DNA of 64,000 nt, taken from positions 806,001 through 870,000 of the forward strand of contig NC_058376.1 in NCBI RefSeq assembly GCF_018350175.1, given 5' to 3'. Source of the stretch: Felis catus (lineage: Eukaryota). Of this stretch, positions 23,338 to 63,369 are shown one piece after another. Below the pieces are notes generated by a model. It saw nothing but the letters and a program-made list of their open reading frames with translations, made no database searches and was not told the origin of the DNA. How positions within the stretch are numbered: the first letter of the stretch is position 1; each line of letters starts with the position of its first letter. The position numbers were made by a program, and so were the translations under genes.

Positions 23338-23340
<3 letters not shown>

Positions 23341-23374
<34 letters not shown>
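23341..23374 (+). repeat. (TG)17 microsatellite (mirror at 26013-26046; (TG)13 at 61874-61899)
   Basis: Direct count. Confidence 0.9.
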
Positions 23375-23375
<1 letters not shown>

Positions 23376-26011: not shown

Positions 26012-26049
<38 letters not shown>

Positions 26050-27904: not shown

Positions 27905-27940
<36 letters not shown>

Positions 27941-37077: not shown

Positions 37078-37097
37078 AAACAGGAGCGGGGAGTGTA
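37078..37097 (+). other. Polypurine-tract-like sequence plus the first 4 nt (TGTA) of the missing 3' LTR
   Basis: AAACAGGAGCGGGGAG then TGTA (37094-37097), after which the sequence no longer matches the 5' LTR. Confidence 0.6.
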
Positions 37098-38538
37098 GGG
37101 GGCAGGAGAGCCCTCCCTGGGGCCCTGGCCTCTGCCGTCCCCTCCCCCCCCCCAGAGCTGCATCCAGTGAACACACTTCAAAGGGGCGGGGGCGGGGGCG
37201 GGGGTGGGGCAGGAAGGTATCGGCGGTCCTGCTTCATGGCTCATGGGCTGGAGCTGGAGGCCATCAGCCACATCAGATGAGGGACATCTGTCCTTGCCCT
37301 GCTCCTGCTTATCCACAGTGTCCCCCGCACTTCCTGTCCTCCCTCTCCTGCCTGGCCAAGCACGTCCTGGGGGGCCCTCTCCTGTTAGTCTGGGCCGGGA
37401 GCAGCCTGGGGCTCAGATCCACCGGTCCTCAGCCTCCTTGGGGCCCCGCTGCCCCTGCTGTGTCGATGCCCCCCCACTCCCCTCCCGGTCTCAGGCGTGC
37501 CTGCCAGCCCTGGGCCGCCCCGTCCTAGCTTGACCTTTCCACACCTGCCTGACCCTAAACTGATAGCCTTTGTGGGAGGGCAGTGTCCTGGGTCCAAGGT
37601 GGCCGGTCCCCCTGGTGGGTGGGACCTCCCCTTCGGCTGACCAAGCCTGGGGCCATTCCAGGGTGGGCTTTTCTGGCCCCGAAGCTGGGAAGGATCCCTC
37701 CTACCGGCCAAGAACCAGGATGCAGCCTCAGACCCCTCCTGGCCACGTGGCACTGTCCCTCTGCTTTGTCACCAGTACACACGGGGAACCGAGGCAGCGC
37801 AACTTGCCCTGGGTCACACAGCTGGTGGGGCCGGGGCTGCTGTTCACGAAGCCGTCATCTGGGATAAACTGAAGTTGGGGGGGGGGTCCAGATGGGGAGG
37901 AGGTGGGGCTGGGTCTCACCACCCTGGCTCGTGTCCTGGTCAGCGTCAGCAAGACAGGGCTGCTCTCGGGCCGGCCTTCTGGGCTCCGGGTCTTACCTGG
38001 CTGTGCCCCGAGGCCTGAGTGAATCTGGTGGGGGACGGACGCGGGGCCTGGCCTGGTTCCTGTCACGGTGGCAGAGGACACAGGCCATAGGAAGGTGTCT
38101 GCAGAGGTCCCCGAGCCTCGGCCCCCCCCCAAATCTCCCATGAGTCCTCCCCCTCACCGGGGCTCTGTGCCTCCTCTCTGGAGACCTCCGCGGGGAGAGG
38201 GACCCCTCATTCATTTCCCCACCTGGAGGGCAGAGCCCCCATCGGCTCGGTGCTGCGCCGGCCGGGTGTACCCAGCCGTCAGGACGTTTCCTCACCGTCC
38301 CAAGGCTGATCTGAAAGAGCCAGAAAGAGAAAGCTGTTCTGAGCCCGTGGGGCCTGGGCCCGGCATGCCCCTCGGGCTTGGGGCTGTGGTCCCTAGCCGC
38401 CCCATGGGGGTGGGGGGCCTCCTCCCTCCTCTTCTCGGGGACTCCAGGCGGGCCCACCGTGGGGCCGTGGGTGTCACCGGGCCTGGACCGTGCTCCAGGT
38501 GCGTGGTGTCCCCGGGAGCTTGCGCAACACTGTCTCGA

Positions 38539-38544
38539 TATAAA
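38539..38544 (+). promoter_or_regulatory. LCN8 TATA box
   Basis: TATAAA about 40 nt upstream of the ATG at 38582. Confidence 0.65.
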
Positions 38545-38581
38545 CCCAGGTGCTGGGGCAGCAGAGGCTCCGTGAGCGGCG

Positions 38582-41269
38582 ATGGATGCGGGGCTGCTGC
38601 GTGTCATCCTGGGCACTGTCCTAGTGCGGGTGGAGACGGCCACGCAGGACCTCAATCTACACAAGGTGGCTCTTCTGTCTTACGTGGACAGGTCGGGCAG
38701 GGAGGGGCCTGCGTGTCCGCTCCACCGGCCCCGCCTCCGTCCCTCCAGCCCCCAGCCGACGCCACAGCAGCCACCCCGGGGGCCCCGGGGCCCACCCAGG
38801 TTGCTGAGGGCACGAGCCTCTCCTGGAGACGGGATGTGAGAGCAAGGACCCAGGGACCGGCAGGGCCAGAGCCCTCCCTGAGCGTTTCCTGTGGGCAGGC
38901 CGGCTGGCCCTGCGGGGTCTCCGGGGCCCGGGGCTCAGCGTGGTCACCTCCTGCTCCCGGATCGGTGGGGTCGCCCCCACCCTCCATGGCGCCACACCCC
39001 GTGGCGCCCGGAAGAGGCTTTCCCAGCGTGGGGCCTTTGGTTCCCGTCTAGATGCTTCTTTGCCAGTCTGTGTTGGCTGCTGAGTCAGGAGCACACCAGA
39101 AGGCATAGAGATGACAGACGTTGGGGACACAAATTCTTTTCTCTTGCAAAACGATCAGTTTCTGAGTTTCAGATGGAAGTTCTGGGCTCCAGGTGGGTGT
39201 CCGAAGGCAGAAGTCCCCTCCCCCGGCTGTGCCCTTCCTGCGGGGGACGGTTGCTGGCCGCCCCCTCCTGTCTTTGGGCTCCAGTCACCGCTGGCCCTGG
39301 CGTCCTGGCCCCAAGGACAGGGCATCGCCGTCTGATGGGCCGGAGGGGCTTCTCAGGAGGGTGGTGACCGTCGCTTTGCCACAAGGGCTTGTTGACCTTT
39401 CAGACCTGCCCAGGTGGTGTGGGTCTGCTCCCTGACCCTGCCCCTGCCCCTGCCCAGGTGGTGTGGGCTCTGCTCCCTTGGACGGGGCTCCGGCTTCTCT
39501 GTCTAGATTGTAGGATTTTGGCGAGAAGCTGGTGTGGCCTCCAGCCAAAACCTGGCGCTAGAGACCCCAAAGAGGCTGGAGGCCTTGTTCCTGACCTTGA
39601 GTGGAGATGAGCTGACGGGGAAGGCTGCGGACGACAGGTGAGGGGCCCCAGGGGGTTCCCGGGAGCTCCGGCAGGAACAGGCGCGTGAGGCCAGCCCCAG
39701 GCTGCACCGGCTGTAGCTGCGGGAGCTGGACGGTGTCCCTTTGGTGGACCGGTCCCCGCTGTGTCCAAAATACCAGACCTTGACCCGCTTCCCCAGCCCC
39801 ACACCCCCAGGGTCCCACAGCTGCCACAAGTCAATCTGCTCCTAGATCTGAAGATAAGCGTAGAGTTTTGAAAAAAACCCCATTAACTGAAAAGAGAGAA
39901 AACAGTGCTGGGGCCCCTGGGGGTCACAGACCCAGGGGGGCAGAGGCTGGCGGGGCCCCGGCCCCGCCCCTCCGCCACCCTCGGCCTGCCCCAGGCCCTC
40001 CTGGGTATGGATCCGGGGCTGGAGCCCTTTGTGAAGATGCGTTCCCCTCTCCGCACTCCTGTTATGGGGCCCGGCACAAGGAACGCCGGCCGGCCTTTCC
40101 CTAATGAGCCCTTTGCTCCCTTCCAGCTCAGGAAGTTGTGAGACAGAAAACATAGTGGGCTCAGAAACCGATGTTTCGGGGAGATTTGTTTTTCCTGGTA
40201 AGAACCGCTGCCCGGTTGTCACAGTTACCACCCCCTGGCCCTGCACGCCAGCTCTCCTCGGCTCTGCCGTTCCCTGCGCTGTTCTTCATGCTGTTCCCTG
40301 TGCTCCTCCTCATGCCCCAGACCCTCCCATTCTCTCAGCACAAACTGGGCCATCGTTCAAGGCCTGGGTCCCCCCGGCCCTCTGCCTGGTGTTACTGGAG
40401 GGTCTGGATGCTGGTCGGGGACAGGATGGAGTCAGACCCTGCCCAACCCGGTGCACGCGGGCTCTCCTCCCCCCGCCCCCCAGGCCACAGGGAGATCCAC
40501 GTGATAGACACGGACTACGAGCAGGACGCCATTCTGAGGGTGTCCCTGCACTGGCAGGGCCAGGATTTCCACATGCTCAAATACTTTAGTAAGCGCACCC
40601 CGCGGTGGGGGCTGGCCTCGCTCCCGCGTCCCGGGGACGGCCCAGCCCAGCCCCCTGGTGTCCCCACAGCTCGGAGCCTCGAGGACGAGTACGGACCAGG
40701 CTTCTAGAGGTTCCGGGAGTTGACAGCTGATGTAGAGCTGTACCTGGTGGCCCGGCACGGTGAGTCCCAGGCCTTCCGGGCGGGGGTTGAGCTGGGGACC
40801 CCGAGGGTGGGGTCCGGGGGCCAGTCCCACAGCACCTCACGCTCCCCTGTCCCGCAGGGAGGTGTGCCAAGCTCCTGAAGGAGGTGAGCCTCGCCCCCCG
40901 CTGTGCCGAGCCCCCAGGCTGAGTCTCCCGGCCTGACAGGGGCCCTGGGTCACTCTGGATCCACTCTGCCAGATGGGGACCCTGAAGGCTGGGGGACTGA
41001 GGACAGGGCTGGGAGAGGGAAGGGGAGAGGCGGAGCCCGTACGTCCCACCCAGGTGGGGACACGGACCCCGTGTCTCAGGTTCCCACTGTGCCGGCCCAT
41101 CCCCTGCTTGAGCCCCGAGAGGTGGGGGATTATCACCCTGCTTTGCAGGTAGAGAAACTGAGGCCCAGGGAGGCTGCTCACAGTCATGCATCTAAGACAC
41201 GGGCTCCCACCTGTGGCCCCAACCACTGCCCTGAGGCCCTGCCCTTCTGTGTCTCAGGAGCTGATCTAG
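38582..41269 (+). pseudogene. LCN8: Epididymal-specific lipocalin-8 with premature stop (W143*)
   Basis: Exons 38582-38665, 39507-39637, 40127-40197, 40484-40588, 40670-40759, 40858-40883, 41258-41269, all GT-AG. Peptides IVGFWREAGVAS, SGSCETENIVGSE, GHREIHVIDTDYE, RSLEDE, ELI* match LCN8. TAG at 40705-40707 where human has GFWKFRELTAD. AATAAA at 41357-41362. Confidence 0.92.
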
Positions 41270-42989
41270 AGGATCCCCTGACCCCAGGCCAGCATGGTCC
41301 GAGCCCCCACCCGCCTGGCCTGCCCTGGCCCCAGGGGGCGGCTCGCACCCGCTCCGAATAAACCCCATGCCAAACCCACTGCCCTGAGTGTCTTTCTTGG
41401 GAAGGTGGGCCTGGGGGGTGACAGGTGGGTGCAGTGGGTGTGTGTCCCATGACTTCCCTGAAGCAGCAGCAAAGCTAAGTGTTGCGTGTTTGTTCACCGT
41501 GAACGGTGGCATGTGTGAACCACTCAGGTCCCGTCCCTGGCTGGACCTTTGCCCAGACAGGGCTGGGCTGGGGGGCCGCCTCTGGGCAGGCTGTCCCGTG
41601 TTTCCTTCCCTGTGGGGCCCGGGGGCCACACAGCTCAGACGCAGGGTGACAGCCCCTGGAACCTCCCCCCTTCCCGCCTGGAGGGTCTCACCCGGCCCTG
41701 CCCTGCTCGGGGCCCACGAGCCAGGCTCCCCGGGTGCGTGGGCCCCGCAACCATCCTCCCACCACTGTCCCGCTCCCAGAGAGCCTGAGCGGCCCCGAGC
41801 CGGGCATCCTTGAGCTGAGCTGCTGGTTTAGTCTCTCAGATGAAAGGGGACCACACTGCATTTCTGCCTACATTCTCCCATGGCTCCCTCTTGCCCGAAA
41901 GTCAGATCCCACAGGCATGCAGCCCAAAGTCCTCCAGTCAAGGCCGCTCTTCTGTCCACCCGCTGGCTTCCACCCACCCTCCCCTGCGTGATCAGCTCAG
42001 CCCTTTCAGTGTCCGGGTCCCCTCATGCACCCTGTCACCCTGTGTCCTACACTGACCGATCGCCCCACTTCCTTTCCATCAGCTGGGGCTGAGACCACAG
42101 GGCAGACAGGGTGTCCTGGTCAGGGCAGAGAAAGTGGGGAAGGTCTCAGCCTAGGATGACCAGGCTCACAGGGAGCAGCTGCCTCACGGGTGAGGCCAAG
42201 CAGCGCTGGGGGGCTGGTGGGGACCGGCCCAGCCCCAGCAGAAACCGCCCCCGCTCAGGCGTCCGGCACCCTCCGCCAAGGCCTGCCTGGAGGGAGGCCT
42301 GCCCGAGGCGGGGGCCTGCCCGGGACCTGCCGGACCGAATCCCGAGCCAGGCTCCCGACAGACCCATGTTGCTCGAAGCTGCCCCTGACAGGTTAGAGGG
42401 GACAACTGGGACTTTCCACGCATCCGTCCGCCCGAAGCTCACAGTGCTGGGTGGTCCGCGTGCCGGTGGGCTCACCGGCTCGGGCAGCCGCCACAAGCTC
42501 CACGGGCCTGGAGGGGGGGCGGCGGGGCTCGGGGAGCAATGCGGCACCAAGAGTTTATGTCTCACGCATCTGGAGCCCGGGTGCTGATGGGTCGGTCTCT
42601 GCTGAGAGCCCTCTTCCGGCCTGGAGCCCGTGGGTTTCCGGCTGTGCCCTCGCCAGGCCCCTGCCCCACACACCCCGGAGAGACCTCTGTGTCTTGCCTC
42701 CCTCCTCTCAGAAGGGCGCCAGTCCTACCCTCACGACCTCCCCCCACCCCGTCACCCCCTCAGAGGCCCCGTCTCCAGGCACAGCCACAGTGAGGATTGA
42801 GGCTTCAACCGTTGCATTTCTGGAGACACGATTCAGTCCCTAACGAAAGCCAGCGGGATTCAGAGGCTGACTCTGGGTCCAGGGCCTCCGCACTGCGTCC
42901 TAAGTGCACGCGCTGCTGGACGTACGAGGAAACAGAAAAGGACGGCTGAGCTGCACACAACGAACAGGAGCGCTGCTAAATGTGACCCG

Positions 42990-43180
42990 GGGGCGCCTGG
43001 GCGGCTCGGTTGGTTGAGCATCTGACCGGCTCAAGTCATGATCTCACAGTTCGTGAGTTCAAGCCCCGCGTCGGGCTCTGTGCTTCAGATTCTGTGTCTC
43101 CCTCTCTCCCTGCCCCTCCCCTGTTCACGCTCTGTCTCTGTCTCAAAAATGAATAAACATTAAAAAGAATAAAATCAAAA
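42990..43180 (+). mobile_element. SINEC_Fc-type carnivore SINE with internal deletion
   Basis: GGGGCGCCTGGGCGGCTCGGTTGGTTGAGC head, CT-rich segment and A-rich tail; degenerate TSD AAATGTGACCCG / AAAAGTGAGCCG. Confidence 0.9.
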
Positions 43181-43850
43181 GTGAGCCGGAGAAGATCCGT
43201 GGGCAGAGCGAGAAGACAGGTGGAGAGCGGCCTGGTACGGACACAAAGGGACGAAAGGAAGGCAGGCTCAAGGGACTAACTCGCCGACGAGACGGCAGAA
43301 TTAAACAGCTGGCTAACGAACCCAGAACGAGCGAGCCAATGGGGCCGGGGGGCAGCGCGACGGGGGCCACCAGGAGAGCCAGGCGGGGACGCCAGTGCCG
43401 CGTGGCACAGCAGCCGAGACGAAAGCTTGCCCGGACGGGCGTAGGGGACCGCAGGGGGCACGAGCCAGTGGCCGCGAGCCCGGGACACGCCGGCACAGGC
43501 TGTCTAAGCTGAGGAGCAGAGAATGACCGCCAGTGGCCGGGGTCGGGCGTGTGAAGTGCTCCCAGGAAGAGAAGGGAGCGAAAATTGGGCAGAAAAAGAT
43601 TTGAAGAAACAGAGGCAAAGATATGCCCACTTGACCGAACACGTCCCGGGCGCAGGGAAGCCAGAGCAGGATGAAAGAAACCACCCCCAGGGACATCGTG
43701 CTCAAGTGGACGCAGCGGCTTGGGGACGACGTTCACGGAGCCGCAGAGAAAAGGCGCTTCGCAGCCAGAGGCCGTGACACCTGGCTTCTCGTGGCACGGG
43801 ACGCAGGCACATCTCTGAAACCAACTCGGAGTTCTGGGAAATCAAGTGTA
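43180..43850 (+). mobile_element. Ancient L1 ORF1 relic, GC/CpG-enriched
   Basis: ORF 43671..43904 ETTPRDIVLKW...GAAEKRRF resembles L1 ORF1 KTTPRHIIIKL...KAAREKR. Confidence 0.6.
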
Positions 43851-43857
43851 TTTTTAA

Positions 43858-44056
43858 GTGTATTTTTAAAATTTATGTATTTACTCTTGGGGTGGGGGGC
43901 ATGAGCAGGGGAGGGGCGGAAAGAGAGGGAGGGAGAGAATCCCAAGCTGACTCAGGGCAGAGTCCGACGCGGGGTGCAAACCCACGAACTGTGACATCCT
44001 GACCTGAGCCAAAATCATGAGTGGGATGCTTAGCCGACTGAGCCCCCGGGGGCCCC
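43858..44056 (-). mobile_element. Carnivore SINE (older CanSINE type)
   Basis: T-rich tail, GAGAGAATCCCAAGCTGAC...GACCTGAGCCAAAATCATGAGTGGGATGCTTAGCCGACTGAGCC. Confidence 0.8.
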
Positions 44057-44847
44057 AATAAAGCTACGCTTCGAGAAATCAACGTGGAGAGATTTCTCCC
44101 TCGTTTACCTGTGGCACAATAAATTACTGCTAGCGTGTTCCTCAGGCAGAGGGAAATTGCAGGCGACGCCCCCCGAGGTCCGCGGGGAGGACGGCGGCGC
44201 AGGGGATGCCGGGAGAGCGCGCTCAGCGGGGACAGAGGGTCAGTGACCTCCCGTGATCGCAAGACTCCGCTTCTCCGCCACGTGTTTCTTGCCTGTCAGT
44301 CCGGACCCAAGAACGCTCCCTTCTTTCCTCTAGAGGCGCAAACCTGTCCAGATCTGTCCAGTGGGGGCTCCCCCCGGACAGCCGCTGAGTCCTTTTGACA
44401 CACTTCCCTGATTCCTCAAACACGTGTTTACTGGAAACACTCCGAGTCCTTTCCTGTTGTCCGTGACCCCACCCTGGAGTCATCCCCCCACGGAGCCGGC
44501 TCCTTCTTGCAGAGAGCGGTGTTGAGAAAGCAGGATCCGAGAGCCAGGTGCCCCTCGCTCCCTCCTCACTGGGCTGGCATGGGCTTGGCCTCAGCAGAGA
44601 GACGCCCCCCGCTTTCCAACCCCGAGAAGACCGTCGCCCTCTGACGCATCCCGGAGCGCACAGAAAGCCGTTTCGGGCTCGCTCCCCCAAACCGCCGCGA
44701 AGGACGAGCCTCAGAAAATCCAGAACTCAGGGTTTGTTTGGGGTTCCTTTACTCTTTAGCCTGAGAATATACAGAAAAAAAATCAGGGCTGATTCCGCTG
44801 ACCCCGTTCGGGTGTTACATCATTCGTCTATTATACAGTTTGACTCC

Positions 44848-45069
44848 TTTTAAAAAGTTTTAAATGTTTGTTTATTTTTGACAGAGAGAGACAGATGGAG
44901 TGCGAGATGGGGAGGGGCAGAGAGAGAGAGGGAGACACGGAATCTGCAGCCGGCTCCAGGCTCCGAGCTGTCAGCACAGAGCCCGATGCGGGGCTCGGAC
45001 TTGTAAACCCCAATATGATGACCTGAGCCGAAGTCGGACGCTCAACTGACGGAGCCACCCAGGCGCCCC
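44848..45069 (-). mobile_element. SINEC_Fc-type carnivore SINE
   Basis: Ends GACCTGAGCCGAAGTCGGACGCTCAACTGACGGAGCCACCCAGGCGCCCC, with GA-rich segment and T-rich tail. Confidence 0.92.
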
Positions 45070-45824
45070 TGTGCAGTTGAATCTCACTCGTTTGCTTTTG
45101 ATGTAATAGGTTACCCAGATCCCAAAGTCAAAGCGACACCAAGGAGGCATGCAGGGGGAGGGGGGTGTAACTTCCTCCCCGGCCCTACCTACCCTACCTG
45201 CCCCTGGGGGGGGGGGCGCACTCCTTAGACTCCGATTTCTCCCTTCTGGGTTTCTTCTGGCAGAAGGAGGCAGACACACACGTTCTGAGTCTCACCCGCC
45301 CGCTTCGCGTGCCCTTCGGCACTTTGTTCTTTCACTTGACGGTACACCCGCGTGTCACGTCACCCGACACCAGTTCACGGAGCCTTCCCACTGCGTGCGT
45401 CGCCGCGTAGGGCTCCGCTGCGGGCACACCGTCTTTGCGCCAACCAAGCTCCCGTGTGTGGCCATTTAGGTGGCTTCCAACGGCGTTCCGTTAGAAACGG
45501 TGCTTTGGTGAGTGAGCACCGCGCACATCCATTTTTTGTGTCGTGGCAGGTGATTCTTCGGGGTAAGTTCCTGAGCGGGCTTCTAGATCAGAAGATAAAT
45601 GGGTTTTGTTAGACGTCACCACATTTCCCTGTATAGGAATCGTACCCTTTTGCGGTCTGAAGAGCCAAACGTGGCACGCTCGGGGCCCCACGGCCTGGCC
45701 AGGGAGCGTGTGGTGTGGCCGAGCTCTTCGACTTTTCGCCGGGTGATAGGTGATAACCAGTTATCGGTGTTGTTTTAATTTGCGCGTCTCCGACGGTGAA
45801 TGAAAATGGAGACCGTCTCCGTTC

Positions 45825-46157
45825 ATCGGGGCTGCCCTCATGAAGGACCATAGCCCTAAACGTCAGAGGTGGATTCTGTCCCAGCTCTGGAGGCTGGAGT
45901 TTGGAACCCAGATGGCTGGGTTGTGTCCTCCTGAGGCCTCTCTCACGGCCATCTCCTTCCCGTGTCCCCACACGGTCTCCCCTGTGTGTGTGTCTGTGTC
46001 TTAATCTCTTCTCATAAGGACCCCAGTTACGTTTAACCCATATGACCTCCTTTTGATTTAATCCCTCTTCAAAGGCTCCATCTCTAAATAGTGCTGCATT
46101 CTGAGGTGTTGGGGTCAGGACTTAAGCAGAGAAATTGGGGGGGGGGACACAATTCAT
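45825..46157 (-). mobile_element. MLT1-type LTR
   Basis: CAGCTCTGGAGGCTGGAG...CTAAATAGTGCTGCATTCTGAGGTGTTGGGGTCAGGAC...GGGGACACAATTCA. Confidence 0.75.
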
Positions 46158-46259
46158 AAGAAACATCTTTTCGTATGTTTAGGCACCACTTTAATTTTTT
46201 TTGTGTGAATCATCTGGTTGTGTCATTTGTCCATTTTTCTGATGAGTTTTTGGCCCTTT

Positions 46260-46475
46260 TTTCTTTAATTTTTAACTATTTGAGAGAGAGAGACAGAGAG
46301 ACAGAGAGAGTGGGGGAGGGGCAGAGAGGCAGAGAGACAGAGAGGGAGAGACAGAGTCTCAAGCAGGCTCCACGCTGCCAGTGCAGAGCCCAATGTGGGG
46401 CTTGAACTCAGGAACTGTGAGATCCTGACCTGAGGCAAAGTCGGACACTTAAATGACTGAGCCACTCAGGTGCCC
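46260..46475 (-). mobile_element. SINEC_Fc-type carnivore SINE
   Basis: GA-rich tract, then GACCTGAGGCAAAGTCGGACACTTAAATGACTGAGCCACTCAGGTGCCC. Confidence 0.9.
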
Positions 46476-47329
46476 TTTTTCTTAAATTTTTAAAAGTTCC
46501 TTATAGAGCATGGCTATTAGCCCTTGCATGTGATATATGTTGGAAATACTTTCTCCAGATCTGTCATTCATCTTTTGACTTTGTGGCTTCTTTTGGTTAC
46601 AAAGAAGTTTAAAAAATACAGACAGGTTATTTATCAATACTTTTTTTTTTATCGCATCTGGATGTTGATGCAAGTTAGTGTGGCCTGTGGGTTTGTAATG
46701 GCCTGATTTGCCTCGGCTGCACGGTATTTCCCAGAATTCCCAGAAGGCGACAGCCTTACAGGGCTTATGGAATGATCTCCCACAGCGACATGGGGTCAAA
46801 CTCCTGCCCCAAATCCCTTATTTGTGAATTCATATGCCTCCTGGTGGTTCTGCTTTCAGGAGTGAACTGATGGAATTAGAAAGCCTTTTCCTACATCCAT
46901 GTGATAGGGAAATTCACCAATGATTTCACTCATTACTTGTGTGGTTCTGTTTCCACATTTAGTATCAGATCTTTGGTCCATTTGGTGTTTACTCTCGTGC
47001 ATGAGGTGAATATGTTTCATTTTAATCTTCTTCCAGATGGAAATCCAGTTGCCCTGACAGCATTGATTTACAAAAACTGATTTTTTCCTGGGGTTTAAGA
47101 CATCTCCTTTGCAGCACGACCTGTTCAATCTGGCTCAGGAGAGCCTACTGTATATATTTTTTCCCCAAATCTGCATTCCGTAAGATCATTTCGGGCTACC
47201 CAGATGTCTTTTTATCTCTACCATGTTTTATGGTTTCCAGCGACATTACGAGAATTTAAAGAACACGGCGTAACATCAAATGTGGCTCTTATCTTGTTAA
47301 GCCAGGTGTTCGTAGCCGTTCTCACAATC

Positions 47330-47638
47330 TGTGTGGTTCCAACGTGTGTGTCTGCCCCCAGCATTCCTGTTGCCATCCTGACCCCCAACATGATGGCGCT
47401 GGGAGGTGGGCTTTTGGAAGGTGACAAGGCCATGGGGGGTGGAGTGCCCATGAGGGGAATCGGCGCAGCCGGAGCCCCCCACGTCCCCCCGCCGTGAGGA
47501 CACCGAGACGCCCTTGTCCATCCTGCAGGCACAGCTGACTGGAACACCCGGCGTCCAGAACTGGGAGAGATCAGTGTCTGTTGCGCGTAAGCCGCCCGGT
47601 GTGCGCTTTTGTGATGCCAGCCCCGGGGCACTAAGGGA
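47330..47638 (+). mobile_element. MLT1-type LTR, GC-shifted
   Basis: CTGACCCCCAACATGATGGCGCTGGGAGGTGGGCTTTTGGAAGGTG...AGAACTGGGAGAGATCAGTGTCTGTTGCGCGTAAGCCGCCCGG. Confidence 0.65.
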
Positions 47639-49009
47639 GGCCGCCTGGGGTCCCAATGCAGGAAGCGTCTGTGGGGCTTCTGTTACCTCTTCCTTCTGCT
47701 GTGTTTCTCTCCGTTCACCTTAGTCTCCCTGAATGTTTTGTCAGGAATCTCCATGCGAAAAAACAGCAAATAGGATTACTCTGAAGCGTGGGGTGATATT
47801 TTTGTCCTTGTGTGTCATCTCCGGCTGCGAGGCGTGGGAGAAGCTGGCAGTCAGGGGCCCTCCTCAGCCACGTTCGAGGCCCGAGGCTCCCCAGGCTCCA
47901 GGGCAGTGGGAGCTTAGCTGCACGTCTGTGCCGGGGCTGGCTGGTTTACCTGTGTCCACCTTCGCCACGGGGCTCACCAAGGGCCGGGTGGTGGCTCATC
48001 AGGGGTCAGTCCTTAGACCTGGCAAGACACGTGGCTTTATCTTTCCTTCACCTTCCGCATCTCGCTTGTTTTGGTGTTAGAACCCTTGGAAGCCGACTGG
48101 CAAAGCCATTGGAAATGTAGTGTGCCCATTCCACCCCCACCCCCGGGGGATCCTGCCGGCCGCCTCCCCTTGGATTTCAGGGTCTCAGATCCAGCCAAGC
48201 CCTCTGCCTTCTGCTCCCAGGTAGGGGCTCAGATGATCCAGAGGTGAGAAACCCAGGCCCACAGAGAACTCTCACGGAAACTTGGGGGATGTGCAGCTCC
48301 CGGCCCGGGTCATGGAGTACAGAGGTGGGGGGCAGCAGGCCAAGCCTGGCCAGAGAGTGGGCGAGTCCAGACAGGTGGAGCGGAGGGGCAGAAGGAACAG
48401 GACATTCCGGGCTGGCTGCTGACTGTGTCGGGAGCAGGAGGCCAAGGCCAGCAGAGCAGAATAACGGGTGGTCAGGAGGGAGTGGGAGGTTTTTTTTTTT
48501 TTTCCTATTTTTAGTGATTGAGACAAAAGATCTGAAGTGCAGCTTCTAGAAGAACTGTTTGTGCCTTCCTTCCCTTGGTCTTGACTTTGGCCTGCTGCCA
48601 GCCACGGTTAAAGACCAGGGTCTCTGGCCTTCCCAGACTGAGCAAGGGAGAGGGTTGAATCCCCAGTGGTGTCAGTGGTTTGACCGGGGTTAGGATGCCC
48701 ATTCTGGAACCGCCCAACAGAAGGAAGCAGACAGAAGCAGGGATCGGCACGGCAGTGTTGATGCTCCCCGGGGCCCAATCCCCATTCTCCAGCGCATCGG
48801 GGCGGGGCACAGGGGCCACCACTGAATAATAATGCCACCCCCTCGGGAAATGTCACCACCTTGCAAGGAGACAGGCCAGCGTGGTGTCTTGGTGGTCAGT
48901 GGCCGCCCACAGTGACCCACGCAGAGACATTTGAACGGGTTTACATGGGCCGGAGGGACTGCGCAGACCCGGGCCCCGCGGCAGGTGTGCTGGTGCAGAC
49001 TTCCGGAAG

Positions 49010-52000
49010 ATGGGGAGCGTCCTGCTCACTGCTCTTCTGACGTCGGTCTCAGCGCCTTGCGCCCAGGCTGTGTGGCTGGGAAGGCTGGACCCGAGGCAGG
49101 TAACGGCCCATCCGTTGGTGCCAGCACTGGCCTCGAGCCCCGTCGGTCCTAGGGGCCCAGGCCCCTCCTGTGGGGCTGCAGTCTCTGGGTTACCCTCCCG
49201 GTGCCGGCCCAGACCGGCACCGGCTACGGGGGGGACGGGTCAGCCTGAGTCAGGGGCCCTGGACTCCCAGACAAAGAGGATGCCTCAAGGGTCTGGGGGA
49301 CCCGGCCCCCCTCACCTGCTCCTCTCCTCCCAGCTTCTGGGGTCCTGGTACGTTCTCGCCGTGGCCTCCGGTGAGAAGGGCTTTGCGGTGGAGAAGGCCA
49401 CGAAGAACATCGAGGGTGTCGTGGTGACCCTTACTGCAGAAAACAATCTGAAAATGCTGTCCTCCAGACACAGGTGAGCGAGCTGTGCGCTGTGGGCCTG
49501 TGTCCCCGGAGAGCAGGTCTGGCGGGCCTCTGGGTGGGATCATGGTGGATGCGTGGATGCGGGAGGCCTCTCGGGGCGAGGCCCCCCCTCAGCTGCCGCC
49601 TAACGTGGGCTCGCGCATCATGTCTCGGAGCCGCTGGTAACCTTCCTCCCACACCCGCGTCTGCCTTCGGGAGCCATGGGGCCCTGGGTCCCGCTGGGAC
49701 GGGCCTGGCCGTGGGACGAGCAAGGACAGAGGAGGTCTGGGGTCCGATGGCGGCCCCGCTATGTTGGCCCCGCGAGCACACACGGTCACGCGCGCCACGG
49801 TGTGGGCCACAAGGCCGCGTGGCTGGCTGTGTTCCGGTGAGGCTGGCGGAATCAGACATCCAAATCCAGAAGCCAGGCGTCTGGAGAGCCCCAGGCTCTG
49901 TGAAAAGCCACCGGTGACCTAAGGGCCACGCGGGTGGACGTAAGGGCCACGGGGGTGGCCGCGGGGCTGGGACGCCATTCCGGTGTCCGCTCTCTGGTGT
50001 GACTGGTTAGCAGCCCCTCCTGGTGCTGTGTCACCTGCACCTCTGGGGACCGCGGCCAGACGCTGGTTTGGAAAGACGGGTGGTGCCAAGCCCCGCTCCC
50101 CACCAGGACTGCAAGTGGGCCCTCTTACATTGAATTGAATTGAGTTGAGTTGAATTGAATTGAATTGAAGTCATCTGTTGGCCTTCGGATAGGAAATGCA
50201 TTTGCATGGCTCAGAAATCAGTCCCCGAAGGTACTCAGAGCGGGTCCTTCCCACCTGCCCAGCCAGCCCGTCCCCTCCCTGCAGGTGACCCATGCTTGTG
50301 ATTCGTGGCGGCTCCTCCGACACGGGCGGCCACACGCCAGCACACGTGTGTCACCGAGCCACGCACGCCGGGAACCTCTCCGTATCCGTCCACACAGGCT
50401 CTGCTCTCTCTTAGAACATTTCCCATTTTATTCTCTTCTGTCTTTATTGAGTTGTTAAAAATTGTGGTAAGATAAATGCAGCACAGAGACGGCCATCTTA
50501 ACCACTTTCAAGGTCACAGTTCAGGGGCGTCAGGCGCATTCACACTGTCGTGCAGCCGTCTCCCCGTCTGTCCCCAGAACGTGTTCATCTTCCCAGTAGA
50601 CTCTGTCCCGTTGCGTGTGGACCCTCCCCTCCCCCAGCCCCACCCTCCTACTCCTCCAGGGCCTCCGGTGAGCATCCACTCCTATAGGACGTGTCCCCCT
50701 GTGACGGGCCGACCTCAGCACGGTGTCCTCCAGCTTCGTCCACGTTGTAGCAGGTGCCGCGATTCCCCTCCCTTTTGAGGCTGACGTTCCGTGGTGTGGC
50801 CGGAGCACGTGGCAGCTCCCGCCTCTTGGTTTTGTAAATCACGCCGCCGTGAACGTGGGTGTGTAAGTCTCCCTTCAGATCTTGCTTTCAGTTCTGGGCG
50901 CTCGCAGCGGCGGGACTGCGGGGTCACACGGTGATTCCATGTCACATTTTCGGAGGCGCTCTGCTCTGTTTTTTTTTTTTTTTAAATATATGAAACTTAT
51001 TGTCAAATTGGTTTCCATACAACACCCAGTGCTCATCCCAACACGTGCCCTCCTCGATACCCGTCATCCACCCTCCCCTCCCTCCCACCCCCCATCAGCC
51101 CTCAGTTCTCAGTTTTTGAGAGTCTCTTATGCTTTGGCTCTCTCCCACTCTAACCTCTTTTTTTTTTTTTTCCTTCGCCTCCCCCATGGGTTCCTGTTAA
51201 GTTTCTGTTGTGTTTTACAGCTGCGTATTGGTCCAGGAGGCTTCGTGCCAGCGCCCTGCTGCTGGGCAGACGGGGGTCTCCAATCTTTTGCAGTTGGAAA
51301 CACACTTTGGGGAGCGGGCTCAGGGGTCTACCCGAAGGATAAATCTCTCGGAGTCCCTGTGGCTCCACGTCATACGTGGCCGGTCCCCTGAACAAGCGCC
51401 TGCCCCGGGCATTCCCTTACTCTTTGTTCTTTGCCGTCTGATGGGCAGCAGATGGCCCCGTGTCAACTTTTATGTACCTTCTCTAAGGGCAGGGGCCAGG
51501 GGCATCCTGGGACATGTCAACGTGGTTTGTGTGCTTCCTCCCCAACACGGGCTCAAACTCACAACCCTGAGATCAAGACCTGAGCCGAGATCAAGAGTCG
51601 GACGCTTAACTGAGTCACCCAGGCTCCCCTGGCTGTTCGTATCTTGGCATATTTTTCTGTTAGGTGTGTTTTTAGTGGTTTGTAAGAACCCTTCAGTTAT
51701 TTGGGATCTTAGCCTCTCATCTGTGATAAAAATTAGTTGCAAATATAGTTCCCAGTTTGTAATTTTTCTTATAACATTGAGAAGGGTTTTTGTTTGTTTG
51801 TTTTATTTTTTTAATTTTAATTTTTTAAAGTTTATTTACTTATTTTGAGAGGGAGAGAAATTGTGAGTGAGGGAGGGTCAAAGAGAGAAAGAGGGAGAGA
51901 GAGAGAATCCCAAGTAGGTTCCACGCTGTCAGCACAGAGCCTGACACGGGGTTCGATCCCACAAACCATGAGATCATGCCTGAGGCTGAAATCTGGAGTC

Positions 52001-53483
52001 GGACCCTTAACCGCCTGAGCCCCCCAGGCACCCCAAGACCCACTGCCTGTCTGTTGTGTCGGTTCACTTTAGGGACTGAGTGGCCCCTTGTGATGCTGGG
52101 GCTCCTCACCCAAAATTGCAGAGGGCCCAGCGTCTGTCTGAGGCTCATTTTGCGCCCTCGCACCCCCACCACCCTGGGGAGGGAGCTGATCTGCACTTGG
52201 CTCTCGTGTAGCTCATTCCCGAGCCAGGCTGGATTCGCTGGAGAGCGAGGTTTCTGGGTAACGGGGGCCGTCAGAGGAAGCCAGGATCCCCTCTGCGACA
52301 CGCTGGCGGCAGGCCGGGCCCCGGCGGCAGGACCTTTGTGTCCCGTGGTCCCGACTCTGGACCCTGAGCTGAGGACGGACGGTCTCTTTTCCAGGCTGGA
52401 GAGGTGTGACGTGGGCACAGTGTTGCTGCGGAGACAGAACTCTGGATGGGTGTTTGAGAACCCCTGTAAGGCGACAGCCTCCGCGGGTGCGGGGCAGCCT
52501 GGGGATGGGCTCGCTCGCCCGGCCAGCACTGCGGGAAGGGGAGGGGATCGGTCACCCCCAGACTCCCTCTGTAGTGTGCAGGGGGGTGGCCCTCTGCCCC
52601 CGTGGGGACAGGACCGGGGGAGTGTGACCCCGGATGAGCTGGGACAGGCCCTCGCCAGCTGGCCATCCGTCACCGGGGACCCGGGGACCACGGGGCTCTG
52701 GGGCTCTGAGCTTGCCGGGGGGCCTCTCGTGTCTCCCAGCCCTGGGCGTGTTAGACTACCGGGTACTGGGCACCAACTTCAGGGACTACGCCATCGTCTT
52801 CACCCAGCTGGAGTTCAAGGACGAGGCCTTCAGCACCGTGGAGCTCTACAGTGAGTGGCTGAGACCTCGGGCCCGCCCACAAACTCCCTGCCGGCAGCAG
52901 CCACGCTGTGCGGGAAGCACATCGTCCCAGGGTCCGGGGCTAGAGAGAGGGGTCCACCGCCTGGGCTGGCCCCTGTGCCCCCAGGGACCCGGCGCCTCAT
53001 CCTGCACTCCCCCCGCTGCAAGAGGGGCGGCTGGGGCGTGGGGCACAGGTGTGAGGGTCCCCTCCTGCCCCGCAGGTCGGACGGAGCTGGCCAGCCAGGA
53101 GGCCGTGCGCCTCTTCACCAGGTGGAGCAGGGGCCTGGGCTTCCTGTCCCAGCAGCAGGCCGTGCTGCAGCGGGACCGTGAGTGTCCCCCGGGGCCGCCC
53201 CCATGCCCAAGAACCGGCTCACTTCCTCTGGTCTCGGGGACCCTCCCGGTCTCAGTGAGTCAGGCAGGACTGGGGGCGGGGGTGGTGGTTAGTTCTTCAA
53301 GGAGTCACCTGCTCCCTGGCCCAAGTCAGGCCGGCAGGGGAGGCCCCGTCTCGGGTGAGGTCGTGGGCCCGTCCTCACGCCTCCTCTTGTCCCTCCAGTC
53401 ACCTGCGCGCACAAGGCCTTCCAGGTAAGCTGGCTTCCCGAGCATCACCCCGCGTCCTACACCCCAGTGCTCTGCAGCCGTGA
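49010..53483 (+). CDS. LCN6: Epididymal-specific lipocalin-6, intact, 181 aa
   Basis: Exons 49010-49099, 49334-49473, 52395-52465, 52740-52850, 53076-53177, 53399-53424, 53478-53483, all GT-AG, total 546 nt. MGSVLLTALL...AVWLGRLDPRQLLGSWYVLAVAS...NSGWVFENP...TNFRDYAIVFTQLEF...TCAHKAFQP* matches LCN6. AATAAA at 53715-53720. Confidence 0.95.
50134..50170 (+). repeat. (TTGAA)n pentanucleotide repeat in LCN6 intron 2
   Basis: TGAATTGAATTGAGTTGAGTTGAATTGAATTGAATTGAA. Confidence 0.8.
50455..51800 (-). mobile_element. Old L1M 3' fragment with a nested younger carnivore L1 3' end (about 50968-51207) and a SINE fragment (about 51540-51630)
   Basis: Poly-T then AAATTGGTTTCCATACAACACCCAGTGCTCATCCCAAC...GAGTCTCTTATGCTTTGGCTC for the carnivore L1; flanks resemble L1M 3'UTR. 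Confidence 0.75.
51815..52034 (-). mobile_element. Carnivore SINE in LCN6 intron 2
   Basis: T-rich tail, GA tract, GAGATCATGCCTGAGGCTGAAATCTGGAGTCGGACCCTTAACCGCCTGAGCCCCCCAGGCACCCC. Confidence 0.88.
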
Positions 53484-54880
53484 AGGGCCAGGGACCCGGG
53501 TGGAGGCAGATGCCCCTCGGGGTGAACCTGGGGTCCCCCAGTGCTCTTCCTGGTTTTCAGTGAATGCTTCGGCCTCCAGCGGGGACAGTGCCCACTGTGT
53601 CCGGACCAGGCCGGCCAGGCACTGGCAACCTGCTCAGCCACCTGGGTGCTGGGTGCTGGGTGCTGGATGCTGGGTGCTGGGCAGGTGCTCCCAGGGACTC
53701 TTGCTGTGTTTCCAAATAAAGCGATTCCACAAACCGCTAGAGTTGCCTCTCACTCGTGTGCTGGGCTGGGCTCGGTGTCGAGGGCGGACAGAGATGGACA
53801 GGGCGCCGCTCTCGTGGGGCGCGGGCCGCACAGGGAGAGGATAGGGTGCGGTGGGCACACCCCGGCTGAACCACACGGCACAGAGAGCCAGCTCGGGGGC
53901 GAGAGGGCCGGCCTGCACTTGTGTCCCTCGGCAGAGTCCCTCTGGGTGAGGGGACCCGCGCACACGGGTCTCGGCCGGGGAGTGGGGGCTGGGCCGGAGG
54001 CAGCCGCTCCCCGGGGAGGGGTCACACAGCCCTGGGCCGATGGGAGGGTCGTCTGCCCGAGTGAGAGCAGGCCTGCGGTTCGAGTTCGGACAGGGTGCTG
54101 GGCCGACGAGGTGGGCACTGGTGCCCACCGGGGTGCCAGGCTGGGGCACCTCGGTGTCCGGGGCAGGGGCACCTCGGTGTCCGGGGCAGGGCTCTGGGGC
54201 AAGGGCAGGGGCCCAGGATTGCAGAGGCCTGGGCTGTGGGGCCTCCTGTGGTCTGGTGGGGCCCTGCCTGAGGTCCTGGCAGAAGCTGGGGTGGGGGCTG
54301 CCCATCCCTCACGGCGAGGGGCGGTGCATACCAGGAAGGGGGGCAGGCGGGCACATACAGGAGAGTTGCATGCACATGCACACACACCCCATGTGCCTGT
54401 GCACACACACCGGCTGCCCCCTCTGTCAACACCTGCTCAGGACAGATCGCCCGTCAGCACCTGCTCAGGGCGACCCTGCGGTCGGGTCCTGCTTCTCACA
54501 CTCGGATAACCTTATGAAGTGACTCATAGTGACACCAGCTGGCTGTTGTCTCTCTTCCGGGGGTGGGGAGCTACTGTGAGAGGCCCAGGGCTCCCACTGT
54601 GAGGAGGGACGGCTCCAGGGGACACGTGGTGACCTGAGGTCGGGGGGGGGGAGTGACCTCGGGAACACGATGGCTTTGTCTTCAGGGGCCTCCCGGGCAG
54701 GTGGCACCGACCAGGCTGAGCACCTGGGCCGGCCCTCTGTGCCCGGGGGAGCCCCCCGGCCTCCCCATCGGCCCACCCCAGGCCGGCTCAAGGCTCCGGG
54801 TTGGTTGGACGGCCACGGCAGGGTCGGTGGGTGGGGAGATTTAAACTCAGTGCCCTGGTGGCCGAAGAGGGAGGCTGGAG

Positions 54881-54991
54881 ATGGGACCGGGGAGGCTGGT
54901 GTCCACGCTGGTCCTGGCGTTCGTGCTGGCCATGGGGTCCCGGCCACAGGAACAGCTGCCCAGGGAGGCCCACAGCCTCAACTGGAACAAG
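54881..54991 (+). pseudogene. LCN10: Lipocalin-10 exon 1 only; gene truncated in intron 1
   Basis: [37 protein letters not shown] then GT, versus human LCN10 ...PRESHALNWNK. TTTAAA at 54840-54845. I found no FSGFWY-type exon 2 downstream, and duplicon sequence starts at 55599. Confidence 0.85.
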
Positions 54992-55598
54992 GTAGAGCCG
55001 TAGGCCTGCTGTCCCCCGAGCCAGGCACCCAGGCCGTGGGGGCCAGGGATCATCCATTTAGGGATCGCTCCCTAAAAATCTCCCAAGGGCCTTCCCGGGG
55101 CCCTGGGCAGGGCCCCGAGGCTGGCAGGAGTCTCCGGCACAGGCCCCTGCCGGCCCAGTGGGACTGCTCCCCCGGCCTCTCCCAGAGCAGCTGCCGGCCA
55201 TGGGGGTGGGTAAGGCGCAGGGCCCCAGGCAGGTGCACCCAGAGATGCTAGGTGGGCAGAGGTGGAATCAGCAGGACGTGTTCTGGAACGGGGAGATGGC
55301 TGGCAGGTGGAACCCTCCAGCGGGGGTGGCTGTGGGCACAGGCTGAGCGGGCCGTGGCGGTGTCTGGGACGGTGGGTTTGCGGCAGGAAATCGGAGGGAT
55401 GGGGCCCCCCCGGAGGCCCTGCACGGGAAGGAAGTTACAGCACACGGTTCCCAGTGCCCAGCCCCCGCACCCACAGACAGTCTGGCGTCTGCCCACCAGG
55501 GCCCCTAACCAGGGGCGTGCAGGTCCGGGGGGCTGGATGCGGGCTGGGTGTCTGGGAGGCATCCCTTGTCCAGTGGGTTCCGGGAACCTGGGAAGGAG

Positions 55599-56731: not shown

Positions 56732-57029
56732 ACTGTGCCGTGCCAGCCCCACTTCCCCAAATTCAAGACCAAGACCCTATCACCCTGTCCCACCCCCGAG
56801 AGCAGAAACCGCTTCTGTCCTAGTTCCTTTGTGGATGCTTCCATGCCTGCCCTCAGCACCCTGTCTGCTCCCCGCTGTGTGCACACACCTGGATCACGAG
56901 AGTGAGCCCCGGACCCCACCCAGGAGGTGGTACGGCCCCTCACCCACCCCAGCAAGGGAGAGCGCCGTCCCCATGGCCCTACTCCCCCTAAGAAGACACG
57001 TAAGCCATATTCACCAAGGTTTTTAACCA

Positions 57030-57065
<36 letters not shown>

Positions 57066-59979: not shown

Positions 59980-60015
<36 letters not shown>

Positions 60016-63000: not shown

Positions 63001-63369
63001 TGGATCCGGGCCCTGGAGCCCCTCAGGGAGGACAGGTGAGACTAGGCAGGAGCCAGGAGAGGGCCCAGTGGAGTCTCCTTGAGGTCATGGCCTCCTGCTC
63101 AGCCCAGACCCTGTTGTCTGCTGACCCCTAGGGCACCTGGATCCCAGCTGCCGGGCAGGCCCGGGGACAGAGACCAGAATGTGGCTCCCGGTAGCTCACA
63201 GGTGTCCCTGTGTCCGGTAGCTACACCTGCCCTACCAGCTGGACTCCCTCCTGGTCGGCCAGCAATACCCCATGGCCAAGAAGAACAGGCCATCGTCAAG
63301 CTCTGAAAGAATGAGTGGCCAGATGGAAGGGGAAGGCTGGCTCTTGGCTCGGGGGGGGGGTTCCTGCCC
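57839..63369 (+). repeat. Third copy of arm plus spacer: direct repeat of 19306-23729, continuing as the reverse complement of spacer 25657 to about 24547
   Basis: Offset 38533, then 38525 after a (TG)4 contraction; matching ORF translations in the track. Confidence 0.95.

What the first reader, a model, noticed from the sequence alone, without database searches (positions are those of the whole stretch)
37098..55598. Epididymal lipocalin block (LCN8-LCN6-LCN10) placed next to COL6A1, out of normal synteny
Established: in human COL6A1 lies beside PCBP3 and COL6A2 on 21q22.3, while LCN15-LCN8-LCN6-LCN10 lie on 9q34.3. Seen: an 18.5-kb slice of the LCN cluster in its normal gene order, starting 1.5 kb before the LCN8 ATG and ending in LCN10 intron 1, bounded by non-LCN sequence on both sides. 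Inference: this is a duplicated copy rather than a chromosome fusion point, because the host L1 resumes at 63622.
Basis: partly seen in the sequence, partly recalled or inferred. Interest (0 to 1): 0.82.

Follow-up and report, generated by a model that had tools for sequence, protein, structure and literature searches.

The report
Cat lipocalin genes copied beside COL6A1
A block of three sperm-maturation lipocalin genes (LCN8, LCN6, start of LCN10) was copied from one cat chromosome to a spot about 30 kb upstream of COL6A1 on another before the living cat species split, and the copied LCN6 now looks like the working gene, at least in Prionailurus, where the original is broken.

Summary
Window 37095-55598 is an 18.5-kb slice of the LCN8-LCN6-LCN10 cluster, in order on the + strand. 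It starts 1,487 bp before the LCN8 ATG and ends 607 bp into LCN10 intron 1. COL6A1 is real (minus strand, ATG at 7261).

The window is domestic cat, Fca126 record CM031420.1, positions 806,001-870,000.

"Duplicate, not fusion point" is correct. Felids keep a parental cluster on a 93-95 Mb chromosome. The same ERV|LCN junction occurs in cheetah and fishing cat. Lion and leopard cat carry the block with the same right-hand junction.

The left flank is a truncated gammaretrovirus-like provirus, not L1. The right flank is a third copy of a local ~7-kb repeat. The L1 at 63622 is a separate minus-strand 3' end.

New findings:
- The ancestral copy was ~21.4 kb and held all of LCN10; the cat deleted exons 2 onward.
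- LCN6 at this locus is intact in five felids (dN/dS 0.06-0.14).
- The parental LCN6 is broken in Prionailurus.
- The cat's copied LCN8 has a premature stop.

This is an ordinary kind of event, an interchromosomal segmental duplication with complementary gene loss. No paper describing it was found. Moderate interest.

The parts
1..7261 (-). 5' part of COL6A1: exon 1 (signal peptide) at 7169-7261, N-terminal VWA exons inside 6493-6939, 4765-5469, 3151-3570 and 2904-3260, first triple-helix Gly-X-Y exons below 1808
   Evidence: PDB 9han_A collagen VI alpha 1 matches; Pfam VWA just below the curated cut-off (23.2 and 23.1 against 23.8 bits); Gly-X-Y pieces; exon 1 by motif and GT donor
17031..17830 (-). 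Probable solo LTR (TG...CA, 800 bp) with a candidate 4-bp target duplication TCTC on both sides; forms the outer end of palindrome arm C1
   Evidence: 99.7% identical to the inverted 5' LTR at 31557-32356. The TSD match alone has a chance probability of about 0.25.
17031..23729 (.). Repeat copy C1 (left palindrome arm)
   Evidence: Self-BLAST: 99.91% identical to inverted 32356-25658 over 6,699 bp
25658..32356 (.). Repeat copy C2 (right palindrome arm, inverted); its last 800 bp are the provirus 5' LTR
   Evidence: LTR U5 ends ...TTTCA at 32356 and is followed by a primer-binding-site-like sequence; colinear with cheetah L008 and fishing cat L007
32357..37094 (+). Internal region of a degenerate gammaretrovirus-like endogenous provirus (gag, partial pol, env TM part); many stops and internal deletions; no 3' LTR
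   Evidence: Pfam Gag_MA, Gag_p30, RVT_1 (C-terminal half only), RNase_H, rve, TLV_coat positions 385-509 of 560; ORF pieces; no LTR pair found
37095..55598 (+). Segment copied from the parental lipocalin cluster (interchromosomal segmental duplication)
   Evidence: BLAST to parental loci L009, L010 and L002 at 91-94% and to the same-locus copies of five other felids at 94-96%; junction alignments
38582..40922 (+). LCN8 copy: six exons, all GT-AG, but an in-frame TAG at 40705-40707 in exon 5 where other felids and sea lion have Trp
49010..53424 (+). LCN6 copy: six coding exons, intact, encodes XP_044892334.1 (180 aa, Pfam Lipocalin)
54881..54991 (+). LCN10 exon 1 (37 codons, GT donor); the rest of the gene is deleted in the cat
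55599..63356 (.). Repeat copy C3. 55599-56743 has the C2 orientation, 56744-57816 is a 1.07-kb insert with a CA repeat, 57817-62254 has the C1 orientation, and 62255-63356 equals inverted 25658-24557.
   Evidence: Self-BLAST at 99.0-99.4%; flank 63472-63601 resembles 23744-23872
63622..64000 (-). 3' end of an L1 element; its body runs off the right edge of the window
   Evidence: ORF 63718-63975 (-) matches human L1 ORF2p residues 1184-1264, E 4e-20

Best explanation
An interchromosomal segmental duplication that arose before the living cats diverged. About 21.4 kb holding LCN8, LCN6 and LCN10 was copied from the ancestral lipocalin cluster. That cluster lies about 1-2.4 Mb from one end of a 93-95 Mb chromosome, cat D4 by established synteny with human 9q34.3. 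The copy landed about 0.8 Mb from the end of the ~158 Mb chromosome (C2), roughly 30 kb upstream of COL6A1. The copied span runs from 1.5 kb upstream of LCN8 to about 0.9 kb past the last LCN10 coding exon. It sits between inverted copies of a local ~7-kb repeat and abuts an older gammaretroviral provirus. This fits a replication-based, template-switching rearrangement (direct, inverted and direct copies of the target plus a foreign insert); that step is inferred. The two clusters then lost genes in a complementary way. LCN6 is kept intact under purifying selection at the new site, while the parental LCN6 is disabled, shown in Prionailurus and indirect for tiger and cat. LCN10 stays conserved at the parental site, while the new-site copy diverges fast and in the cat lost exons 2 onward through a lineage-specific deletion ending at 55598. 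LCN8 decays at both sites in several species. The paralogues still exchange short tracts by gene conversion.
For: Identity of the window: L004 (Felis catus GCA_018350175.1, CM031420.1:845010-869563) equals window 39010-63563 at 100.000%.

Two loci per genome.

Parental direction: the 93-95 Mb locus keeps the upstream LCN15-like lipocalin gene, as sea lion does (L009, L010, L011), and that gene is not in the copy.

Single origin: the ERV|LCN junction is identical in cat, cheetah and fishing cat. The right end of parental homology (L002 19558) plus a 221-bp filler is shared by lion and fishing cat.

Age: an 8.4-kb tree puts all six new-site copies in one clade (99/99) with the felid species order inside it. 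The parental copies are their sister group, and sea lion lies outside both.

LCN6 at the new site: intact with canonical splice sites in cat, three Prionailurus and lion. Against lion there are 9-10 synonymous and 2-4 non-synonymous changes, dN/dS 0.06-0.14, binomial P 4e-5 to 1e-3.

Parental LCN6 in Prionailurus: ATG to ACG, a stop at codon 14, exon 3 acceptor GG, and a 1-nt deletion in exon 4.

LCN10: the parental copy is 95-98% identical to clouded-leopard LCN10 in exons 1, 2 and 4 (67-80% in the exon 3 and 5 alignments, whose HSPs run past the exon ends). The new-site copies are 75-87% identical, and the cat keeps exon 1 only.

Gene conversion: mosaic paralogue distances.
Against: Chromosome names (C2, D4) rest on record length and established synteny; they were not tested here.

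The cat's own parental LCN6 was never seen as DNA. Only a truncated UniProt model (P0003) with parental-type residues was available. The leopard parental LCN6 exons 1-2 look intact, so 'the parental copy is dead in all cats' is not shown.

Support for monophyly of the parental clade is only 75/83, and gene conversion blurs the dating.

No expression data exist for either locus.

The template-switching mechanism is inferred from the architecture alone. The solo-LTR target duplication could be chance (p about 0.25).

No non-felid feliform was sampled.
Confidence: 0.8

Rival explanations
1. Assembly misjoin or collapsed/chimeric contig in the cat reference: the lipocalin block does not really lie beside COL6A1.
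For: The block lies among near-identical inverted and direct repeats (99.0-99.9%). This is a subtelomeric, GC-rich context where assemblers err.
Against: Independent assemblies of six species place LCN6 or LCN8 0.81-0.85 Mb into a 156-160 Mb record (fishing cat: a 4.46 Mb contig): cat, leopard cat, Iriomote cat, fishing cat, lion and cheetah. They share the same left junction or right junction. The copies form their own clade, distinct from the parental locus.
Confidence: 0.02
2. Evolutionary breakpoint or fusion: the lipocalin cluster itself moved (translocation), or the 9q34-like and 21q22-like segments are ancestrally adjacent in carnivores.
For: Both regions are subtelomeric, and the gene order inside the block is unchanged.
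Against: The full cluster with LCN15-like, LCN8, LCN6 and LCN10 remains on the 93-95 Mb chromosome in the same genomes. The block here is only 18.5 kb (21.4 kb ancestrally) and has local repeat copies on both sides. Sea lion sequences branch outside both felid copies.
Confidence: 0.02
3. A neutral, decaying duplicate: all three copied genes are pseudogenes or on their way there, and the parental cluster does the work.
For: In the cat the copied LCN8 has a TAG (40705-40707) and LCN10 is reduced to exon 1. dN/dS for copied LCN8 is about 0.5-1.6. Leopard cat and Iriomote cat deleted LCN8 entirely.
Against: Copied LCN6 is intact in five species with dN/dS 0.06-0.14. The parental LCN6 of Prionailurus has lost its start codon and carries a stop and a frameshift. 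NCBI's only cat protein named LCN6 among the hits is encoded here.
Confidence: 0.15
4. Insertion into a single host L1 that resumes at 63622.
For: An L1 3' end does begin near 63622.
Against: The left flank has retroviral gag, pol and env domains and an LTR, with no L1 similarity. The right L1 is on the minus strand at its own 3' terminus. Between the block and that L1 lie 7.8 kb of local repeat C3.
Confidence: 0.01

Closest known systems
Subtelomeric interchromosomal segmental duplications of mammals (e.g. human subtelomeric duplicon exchange)
   Same: A block of tens of kb holding whole genes was copied between the distal ~1-2 Mb of two non-homologous chromosomes. It shows later structural variation between species and ectopic gene conversion between copies.
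   Different: There is one extra copy only, it is old (shared by Pantherinae and Felinae), and one gene in it is under clear purifying selection. This differs from a recent multi-copy duplicon family.
Gene relocation by duplication followed by loss of the parental copy (complementary or reciprocal gene loss)
   Same: LCN6 is retained at the new site and disabled at the old one in Prionailurus. LCN10 shows the reverse pattern.
   Different: Loss of the parental LCN6 is shown directly only for two Prionailurus species. LCN8 follows no clean pattern.
DUP-TRP/INV-DUP and other replication-based (FoSTeS/MMBIR) complex rearrangements described at human disease loci
   Same: The target repeat is present three times, as direct, inverted and direct copies. 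A foreign segment sits at one junction, with 0-2 nt microhomology (GT at 37095) and a 221-bp filler at the ancestral right junction.
   Different: This event is germline-fixed and about 10 million years old or more, and later deletions and inversions overprint it. The original junction set cannot be fully reconstructed from one window plus 10-kb flanks.
Epididymal lipocalin cluster LCN5/6/8/10 of mouse chromosome 2 and human 9q34.3
   Same: Same genes in the same order and orientation. Joint knockout of Lcn5, Lcn6, Lcn8 and Lcn10 in mouse gives male subfertility (PMC10506895).
   Different: In cats part of the cluster exists a second time on another chromosome, away from the other cluster members.

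Membership tests
Lipocalin family; LCN8, LCN6 and LCN10 orthology groups | Best matches are proteins named LCN8, LCN6 and LCN10, with the Pfam PF00061 fold | tested here: met
   (named hits at 85-100% identity in felids). PF00061 is recorded for the cat 180-aa LCN6 product and for the fishing-cat LCN8-like product.
Lipocalin family; LCN8, LCN6 and LCN10 orthology groups | Conserved multi-exon lipocalin gene structure with canonical splice sites, and gene order LCN8-LCN6-LCN10 on one strand | tested here: met
   The order is the same as in the sea lion and felid parental loci.
Functional gene (as opposed to pseudogene), per copied gene in the cat | Uninterrupted reading frame, start codon, splice sites, and purifying selection | tested here: inconclusive
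   LCN6 meets all four criteria. LCN8 fails because of a TAG at 40705-40707. LCN10 fails because only exon 1 remains. Expression was not testable.
Interchromosomal segmental duplication | Two paralogous copies in the same genome on different chromosomes, more than 1 kb long and over 90% identical | tested here: met
   Iriomote cat has L006 (157.7 Mb record) and L002 (93.2 Mb record). Fishing cat has L003/L007 and L009. Paralogue p-distance is 3.8% over 8.4 kb.
Interchromosomal segmental duplication | Discrete breakpoints where paralogy ends, shared by descent among species | tested here: met
   Left breakpoint at 37094/37095. Ancestral right breakpoint at L002 19558. Cat-specific right edge at 55598.
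   The left side is a retroviral provirus. The right L1 is a minus-strand ORF2 C-terminus.
Gammaretrovirus-like endogenous retrovirus | LTR, primer-binding site, gag (MA, p30), pol (RT, RNase H, integrase) and env (TLV_coat TM) in that order on one strand | tested here: met
   The element is degenerate: RT N-terminal half, protease and most of env SU were not detected, there are many stops, and the 3' LTR is absent.
DUP-TRP/INV-DUP-type replicative rearrangement | Three copies of a segment with the middle one inverted, and junctions with microhomology or templated insertions | tested here: inconclusive
   The copy number and orientations fit, as do the 2-nt microhomology and the 221-bp filler. 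Later rearrangements differ between species, and the pre-insertion state was not available.

The most novel reading that the evidence does not exclude
In the cat family the working LCN6 gene has moved: the copy beside COL6A1 is the functional one, and the original in the lipocalin cluster died early. The 1-nt exon 4 deletion appears to be shared by tiger and Prionailurus. A conserved, co-regulated epididymal gene cluster has therefore been split across two chromosomes, and the halves still exchange sequence by interchromosomal gene conversion. This would be a natural experiment on whether epididymis-specific expression of these lipocalins needs the cluster context.
Probability: 0.55. Interest if true: 0.55.

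Novelty: new member of a known kind. Interest (0 to 1): 0.42.

Why it matters
The lipocalins LCN5, 6, 8 and 10 act together in sperm maturation in mouse (PMC10506895) and lie in one conserved cluster across mammals. Cats offer a case where three of them were copied to a new chromosomal setting, upstream of a collagen gene, and where selection kept LCN6 at the new place.

- It bears on annotation. NCBI calls some of these copies 'LCN6' and others 'LCN6-like', so orthology tables for felids will be wrong if the two loci are confused.
- It bears on studies of feline male fertility.
- It bears on how subtelomeric duplication, provirus-rich repeat structures and gene conversion reshape gene families.

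It does not reveal a new kind of element or mechanism.

Tried and rejected
- Pfam on single exons gave only weak VWA hits, and nothing for the L1 piece. PDB sequence search settled both COL6A1 and L1.
- A search for an LTR pair inside 32200-37300 found none. The provirus has a 5' LTR only, recognised from the poly(A) signal, the terminal CA and a primer-binding-site-like sequence.
- Weak tblastn hits of LCN10 exon 2 to the local repeat (27971-28141 and its two copies; 32% identity, E about 0.04) lack the lipocalin G-x-W motif. I treat them as GC-rich noise.
- The 304-311-aa genes that annotation pipelines call in the repeat have no Pfam hit and are low-complexity. I treat them as doubtful models.
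- The cat parental LCN8 isoform P0068 is not on record for a contig look-up, so the cat's own parental locus was never fetched.
- First attempts to fit the LCN6 exon model with narrow splice-site windows failed and were redone.
- Three literature searches found no paper on a felid LCN duplication. Subscription journals are largely absent from that library.
Full report
**What the window is.** A locus fetched through the protein XP_044892334.1 (Felis catus GCA_018350175.1, record CM031420.1, 158,578,461 bp, positions 845,010-869,563) matches window 39010-63563 at 100.000% over 24,554 bp. The window is therefore CM031420.1:806,001-870,000 of the domestic cat Fca126 assembly. By length and accession order this is chromosome C2; that assignment is an inference. 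The sequence has no N and is GC-rich, 0.5-0.68.

**COL6A1.** Gly-X-Y coding pieces lie on the minus strand below 1808.
- Minus-strand ORF pieces 4765-5469 and 3151-3570 match PDB chain 9han_A, 'Collagen type VI alpha 1 chain', at residues 75-143 and 143-196 (E 4e-37 and 8e-32).
- The piece 6493-6939 carries the start of the N-terminal VWA domain.
- Exon 1 (signal peptide, ending in a GT donor) is at 7169-7261.

COL6A1 thus runs leftward out of the window, and its ATG is at 7261.

**The lipocalin block.**
- LCN6: an ORF at 48935-49474 holds LCN6 exons 1 and 2. A word search returned felid proteins named epididymal-specific lipocalin-6 at 100% identity. The cat protein P0063 is reproduced exactly by six exons at 49010-49099, 49334-49473, 52395-52465, 52740-52850, 53076-53177 and 53399-53424.
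- LCN8: the search returned proteins named lipocalin-8. Spliced fitting gives six GT-AG exons between 38582 and 40919.
- LCN10: named LCN10 proteins align only with residues 1-37, at 54881-54991, followed by a GT donor.

Homology to the parental cluster of other felids begins at 37095 and ends at 55591-55598.

**It is a duplicate, and it is old.** LCN6 or LCN8 proteins map to two places in single assemblies.

| Species | Copy beside COL6A1 | Parental copy |
|---|---|---|
| Iriomote cat | 157.7 Mb record at 0.81 Mb (L006) | 93.2 Mb record at 90.8 Mb (L002) |
| Fishing cat | L003/L007 | L009 |
| Cheetah | P0084, 156.4 Mb record | P0075, 93.0 Mb record |
| Domestic cat | this window | LCN8 and LCN10 models on a 95.15 Mb record |

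- The 93-95 Mb locus also carries an upstream lipocalin gene (LCN15-like), as sea lion does, and that gene is not in the copy. It is therefore the parental locus.
- The junction between provirus and lipocalin sequence (…GGGGAGT|GTAGGGGGCAGG…, 37094/37095) is identical in cat, cheetah and fishing cat.
- A maximum-likelihood tree of 8.4 kb (window 42000-50400) puts the six copies beside COL6A1 in one clade (99/99). Lion is outermost, and the three parental copies form the sister group (75/83). Sea lion lies outside both.
- The stem of the new-site clade is short (0.007) against a crown depth of about 0.02-0.027. The event therefore looks only slightly older than the Panthera-Felis split.
- Paralogue distances are mosaic. 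They are 1.4% in 42000-42684 within Prionailurus and 1.6% in 44082-44781 within Panthera, against 3.5-5% elsewhere. This points to later interchromosomal gene conversion and makes any date a minimum.

**The copy was originally longer.** Lion, leopard cat, Iriomote cat and fishing cat have about 2.9 kb more to the right of window-equivalent 55591. That stretch is homologous to the parental sequence up to L002 19558 and carries LCN10 exons 2 to the end. The end of parental homology plus a 221-bp filler is shared by lion and fishing cat.
- The ancestral insert was about 21.4 kb and held three whole genes.
- In the cat, LCN10 intron 1 is joined about 25 nt before the exon 2 acceptor to a piece of the local repeat. 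This is a lineage-specific deletion.
- Leopard cat and Iriomote cat instead lost window-equivalent 30760-41951, which includes all of LCN8.

**The flanks.** Self-comparison shows three copies of a local repeat.
- C1 at 17031-23729 and C2 at 25658-32356 form a palindrome, 99.91% identical with a 1.9-kb spacer.
- C3 at 55599-63356 follows the lipocalin block directly.
- Cheetah and fishing cat are colinear with C2, the provirus and the lipocalin block. Fishing cat lacks window 23918-30067.

The 32357-37094 element is not L1.
- It has Gag_MA, Gag_p30, the C-terminal half of RVT_1, RNase_H, integrase and the TM part of TLV_coat, in that order on the + strand. Many stops interrupt it.
- A poly(A) signal and a terminal …CA at 32356, followed by a primer-binding-site-like sequence, mark the end of a 5' LTR. 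That point is also exactly where the C1/C2 homology ends.
- In C1 the inverted LTR (17031-17830) is flanked by TCTC on both sides. This suggests a solo LTR at the original integration site, although the match alone could be chance (p about 0.25).
- The provirus has no 3' LTR. The lipocalin sequence starts within 3 nt of where that LTR should begin. I cannot explain this.
- The only L1 near the block is a minus-strand ORF2 C-terminus at 63718-63975. It is the 3' end of a separate element.

**Fate of the genes.**

| Gene | Copy beside COL6A1 | Parental copy |
|---|---|---|
| LCN6 | Intact, canonical splice sites in cat, three Prionailurus and lion | Two Prionailurus: ATG changed to ACG and a stop at codon 14. 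Iriomote cat also: exon 3 acceptor GG and a 1-nt deletion in exon 4 |
| LCN8 | Cat: TAG at 40705-40707 replaces a conserved Trp codon. Cheetah: two donor sites lost. Fishing cat intact; lion exons 2-6 intact | Leopard and Prionailurus: +1 insertion in exon 3. Prionailurus also lacks exon 2 |
| LCN10 | Many amino-acid changes; cat keeps exon 1 only | Conserved |

- LCN6 at the new site: against lion there are 9-10 synonymous and 2-4 non-synonymous differences, dN/dS 0.06-0.14, binomial P 4e-5 to 1e-3.
- Parental LCN6: the defects come. A tiger protein model with parental-type residues shows the same 'STGS' reading that the exon 4 deletion produces, which is indirect evidence. Exons 1-2 of the leopard parental copy look intact.
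- LCN8. dN/dS among the copies at this locus is about 0.5-1.6.
- LCN10.

**Mechanism (inferred).** Several features fit a replication-based template-switching event at a subtelomeric site:
- three copies of the target in direct, inverted and direct order;
- a foreign 21-kb segment at one junction;
- 2-nt microhomology (GT) at the left junction;
- a 221-bp filler at the right junction.

The event would have been followed by solo-LTR formation in C1, arm-to-arm conversion, and species-specific deletions and inversions. The pre-insertion state was not available, so this remains a model.

**Comparison and novelty.** This is a segmental duplication with complementary gene loss, which is a known kind of event. 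The copies are already in public annotation under names such as 'LCN6', 'LCN6-like' and 'LCN8-like'. Three full-text searches found no paper describing the felid duplication. The functional background, that joint loss of Lcn5/6/8/10 causes male subfertility in mouse, comes from PMC10506895.

**Verdict.** Interest is moderate.

Noticed in passing
window 17031-32356: A 6.7-kb palindrome (arms 99.91% identical, 1.9-kb spacer at 23730-25657) lies 10 kb upstream of COL6A1. Its outer 800 bp on each side are inverted copies of a retroviral LTR. Fishing cat lacks window 23918-30067, which looks like a deletion across the centre of the palindrome.
   Followed up: partly
window 37048-37097: The provirus ends within 3 nt of the expected start of its 3' LTR: the env stop, a purine-rich tract, then TGT, directly joined to lipocalin-cluster DNA. 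This is too precise to be a random break, and I have no explanation.
   Followed up: partly
window 40705-40707: An in-frame TAG in LCN8 exon 5. An ORF from an ENA contig (P0067, 99% identical, with the same intron-derived residues as this copy) has Trp there. The stop may therefore be polymorphic or specific to this haplotype.
   Followed up: partly
L002 and L009 against window 39323-39750: The parental LCN8 of Prionailurus lacks a 428-bp stretch that holds exon 2. All parental copies examined (leopard and two Prionailurus) have a +1 insertion in exon 3. Several public LCN8 protein models for felids read around this.
   Followed up: partly
alignment of window 42000-50400 with L003, L005, L009 and L010: Short tracts where the two paralogues of one lineage are far closer (1.4-1.6%) than orthologues are. 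This indicates gene conversion between different chromosomes.
   Followed up: partly
window 3683-4471: An imperfect tandem repeat array (self-matches at 76-90% with offsets of about 23-370 bp) inside a COL6A1 intron. It gives long proline-rich pseudo-ORFs on the minus strand.
   Followed up: no
window 9330-9670: Another minus-strand L1 ORF2 C-terminal fragment upstream of COL6A1, 74% identical to the L1 at 63658-63931.
   Followed up: no
window 58598-60231 and its copies in C1 and C2; L001 147-1361; L004 19589-21222: Annotation pipelines call a 304-311-aa gene with no Pfam domain inside each copy of the local repeat. The translations are GC-rich and low in complexity, so these are probably not real proteins.
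   Followed up: partly
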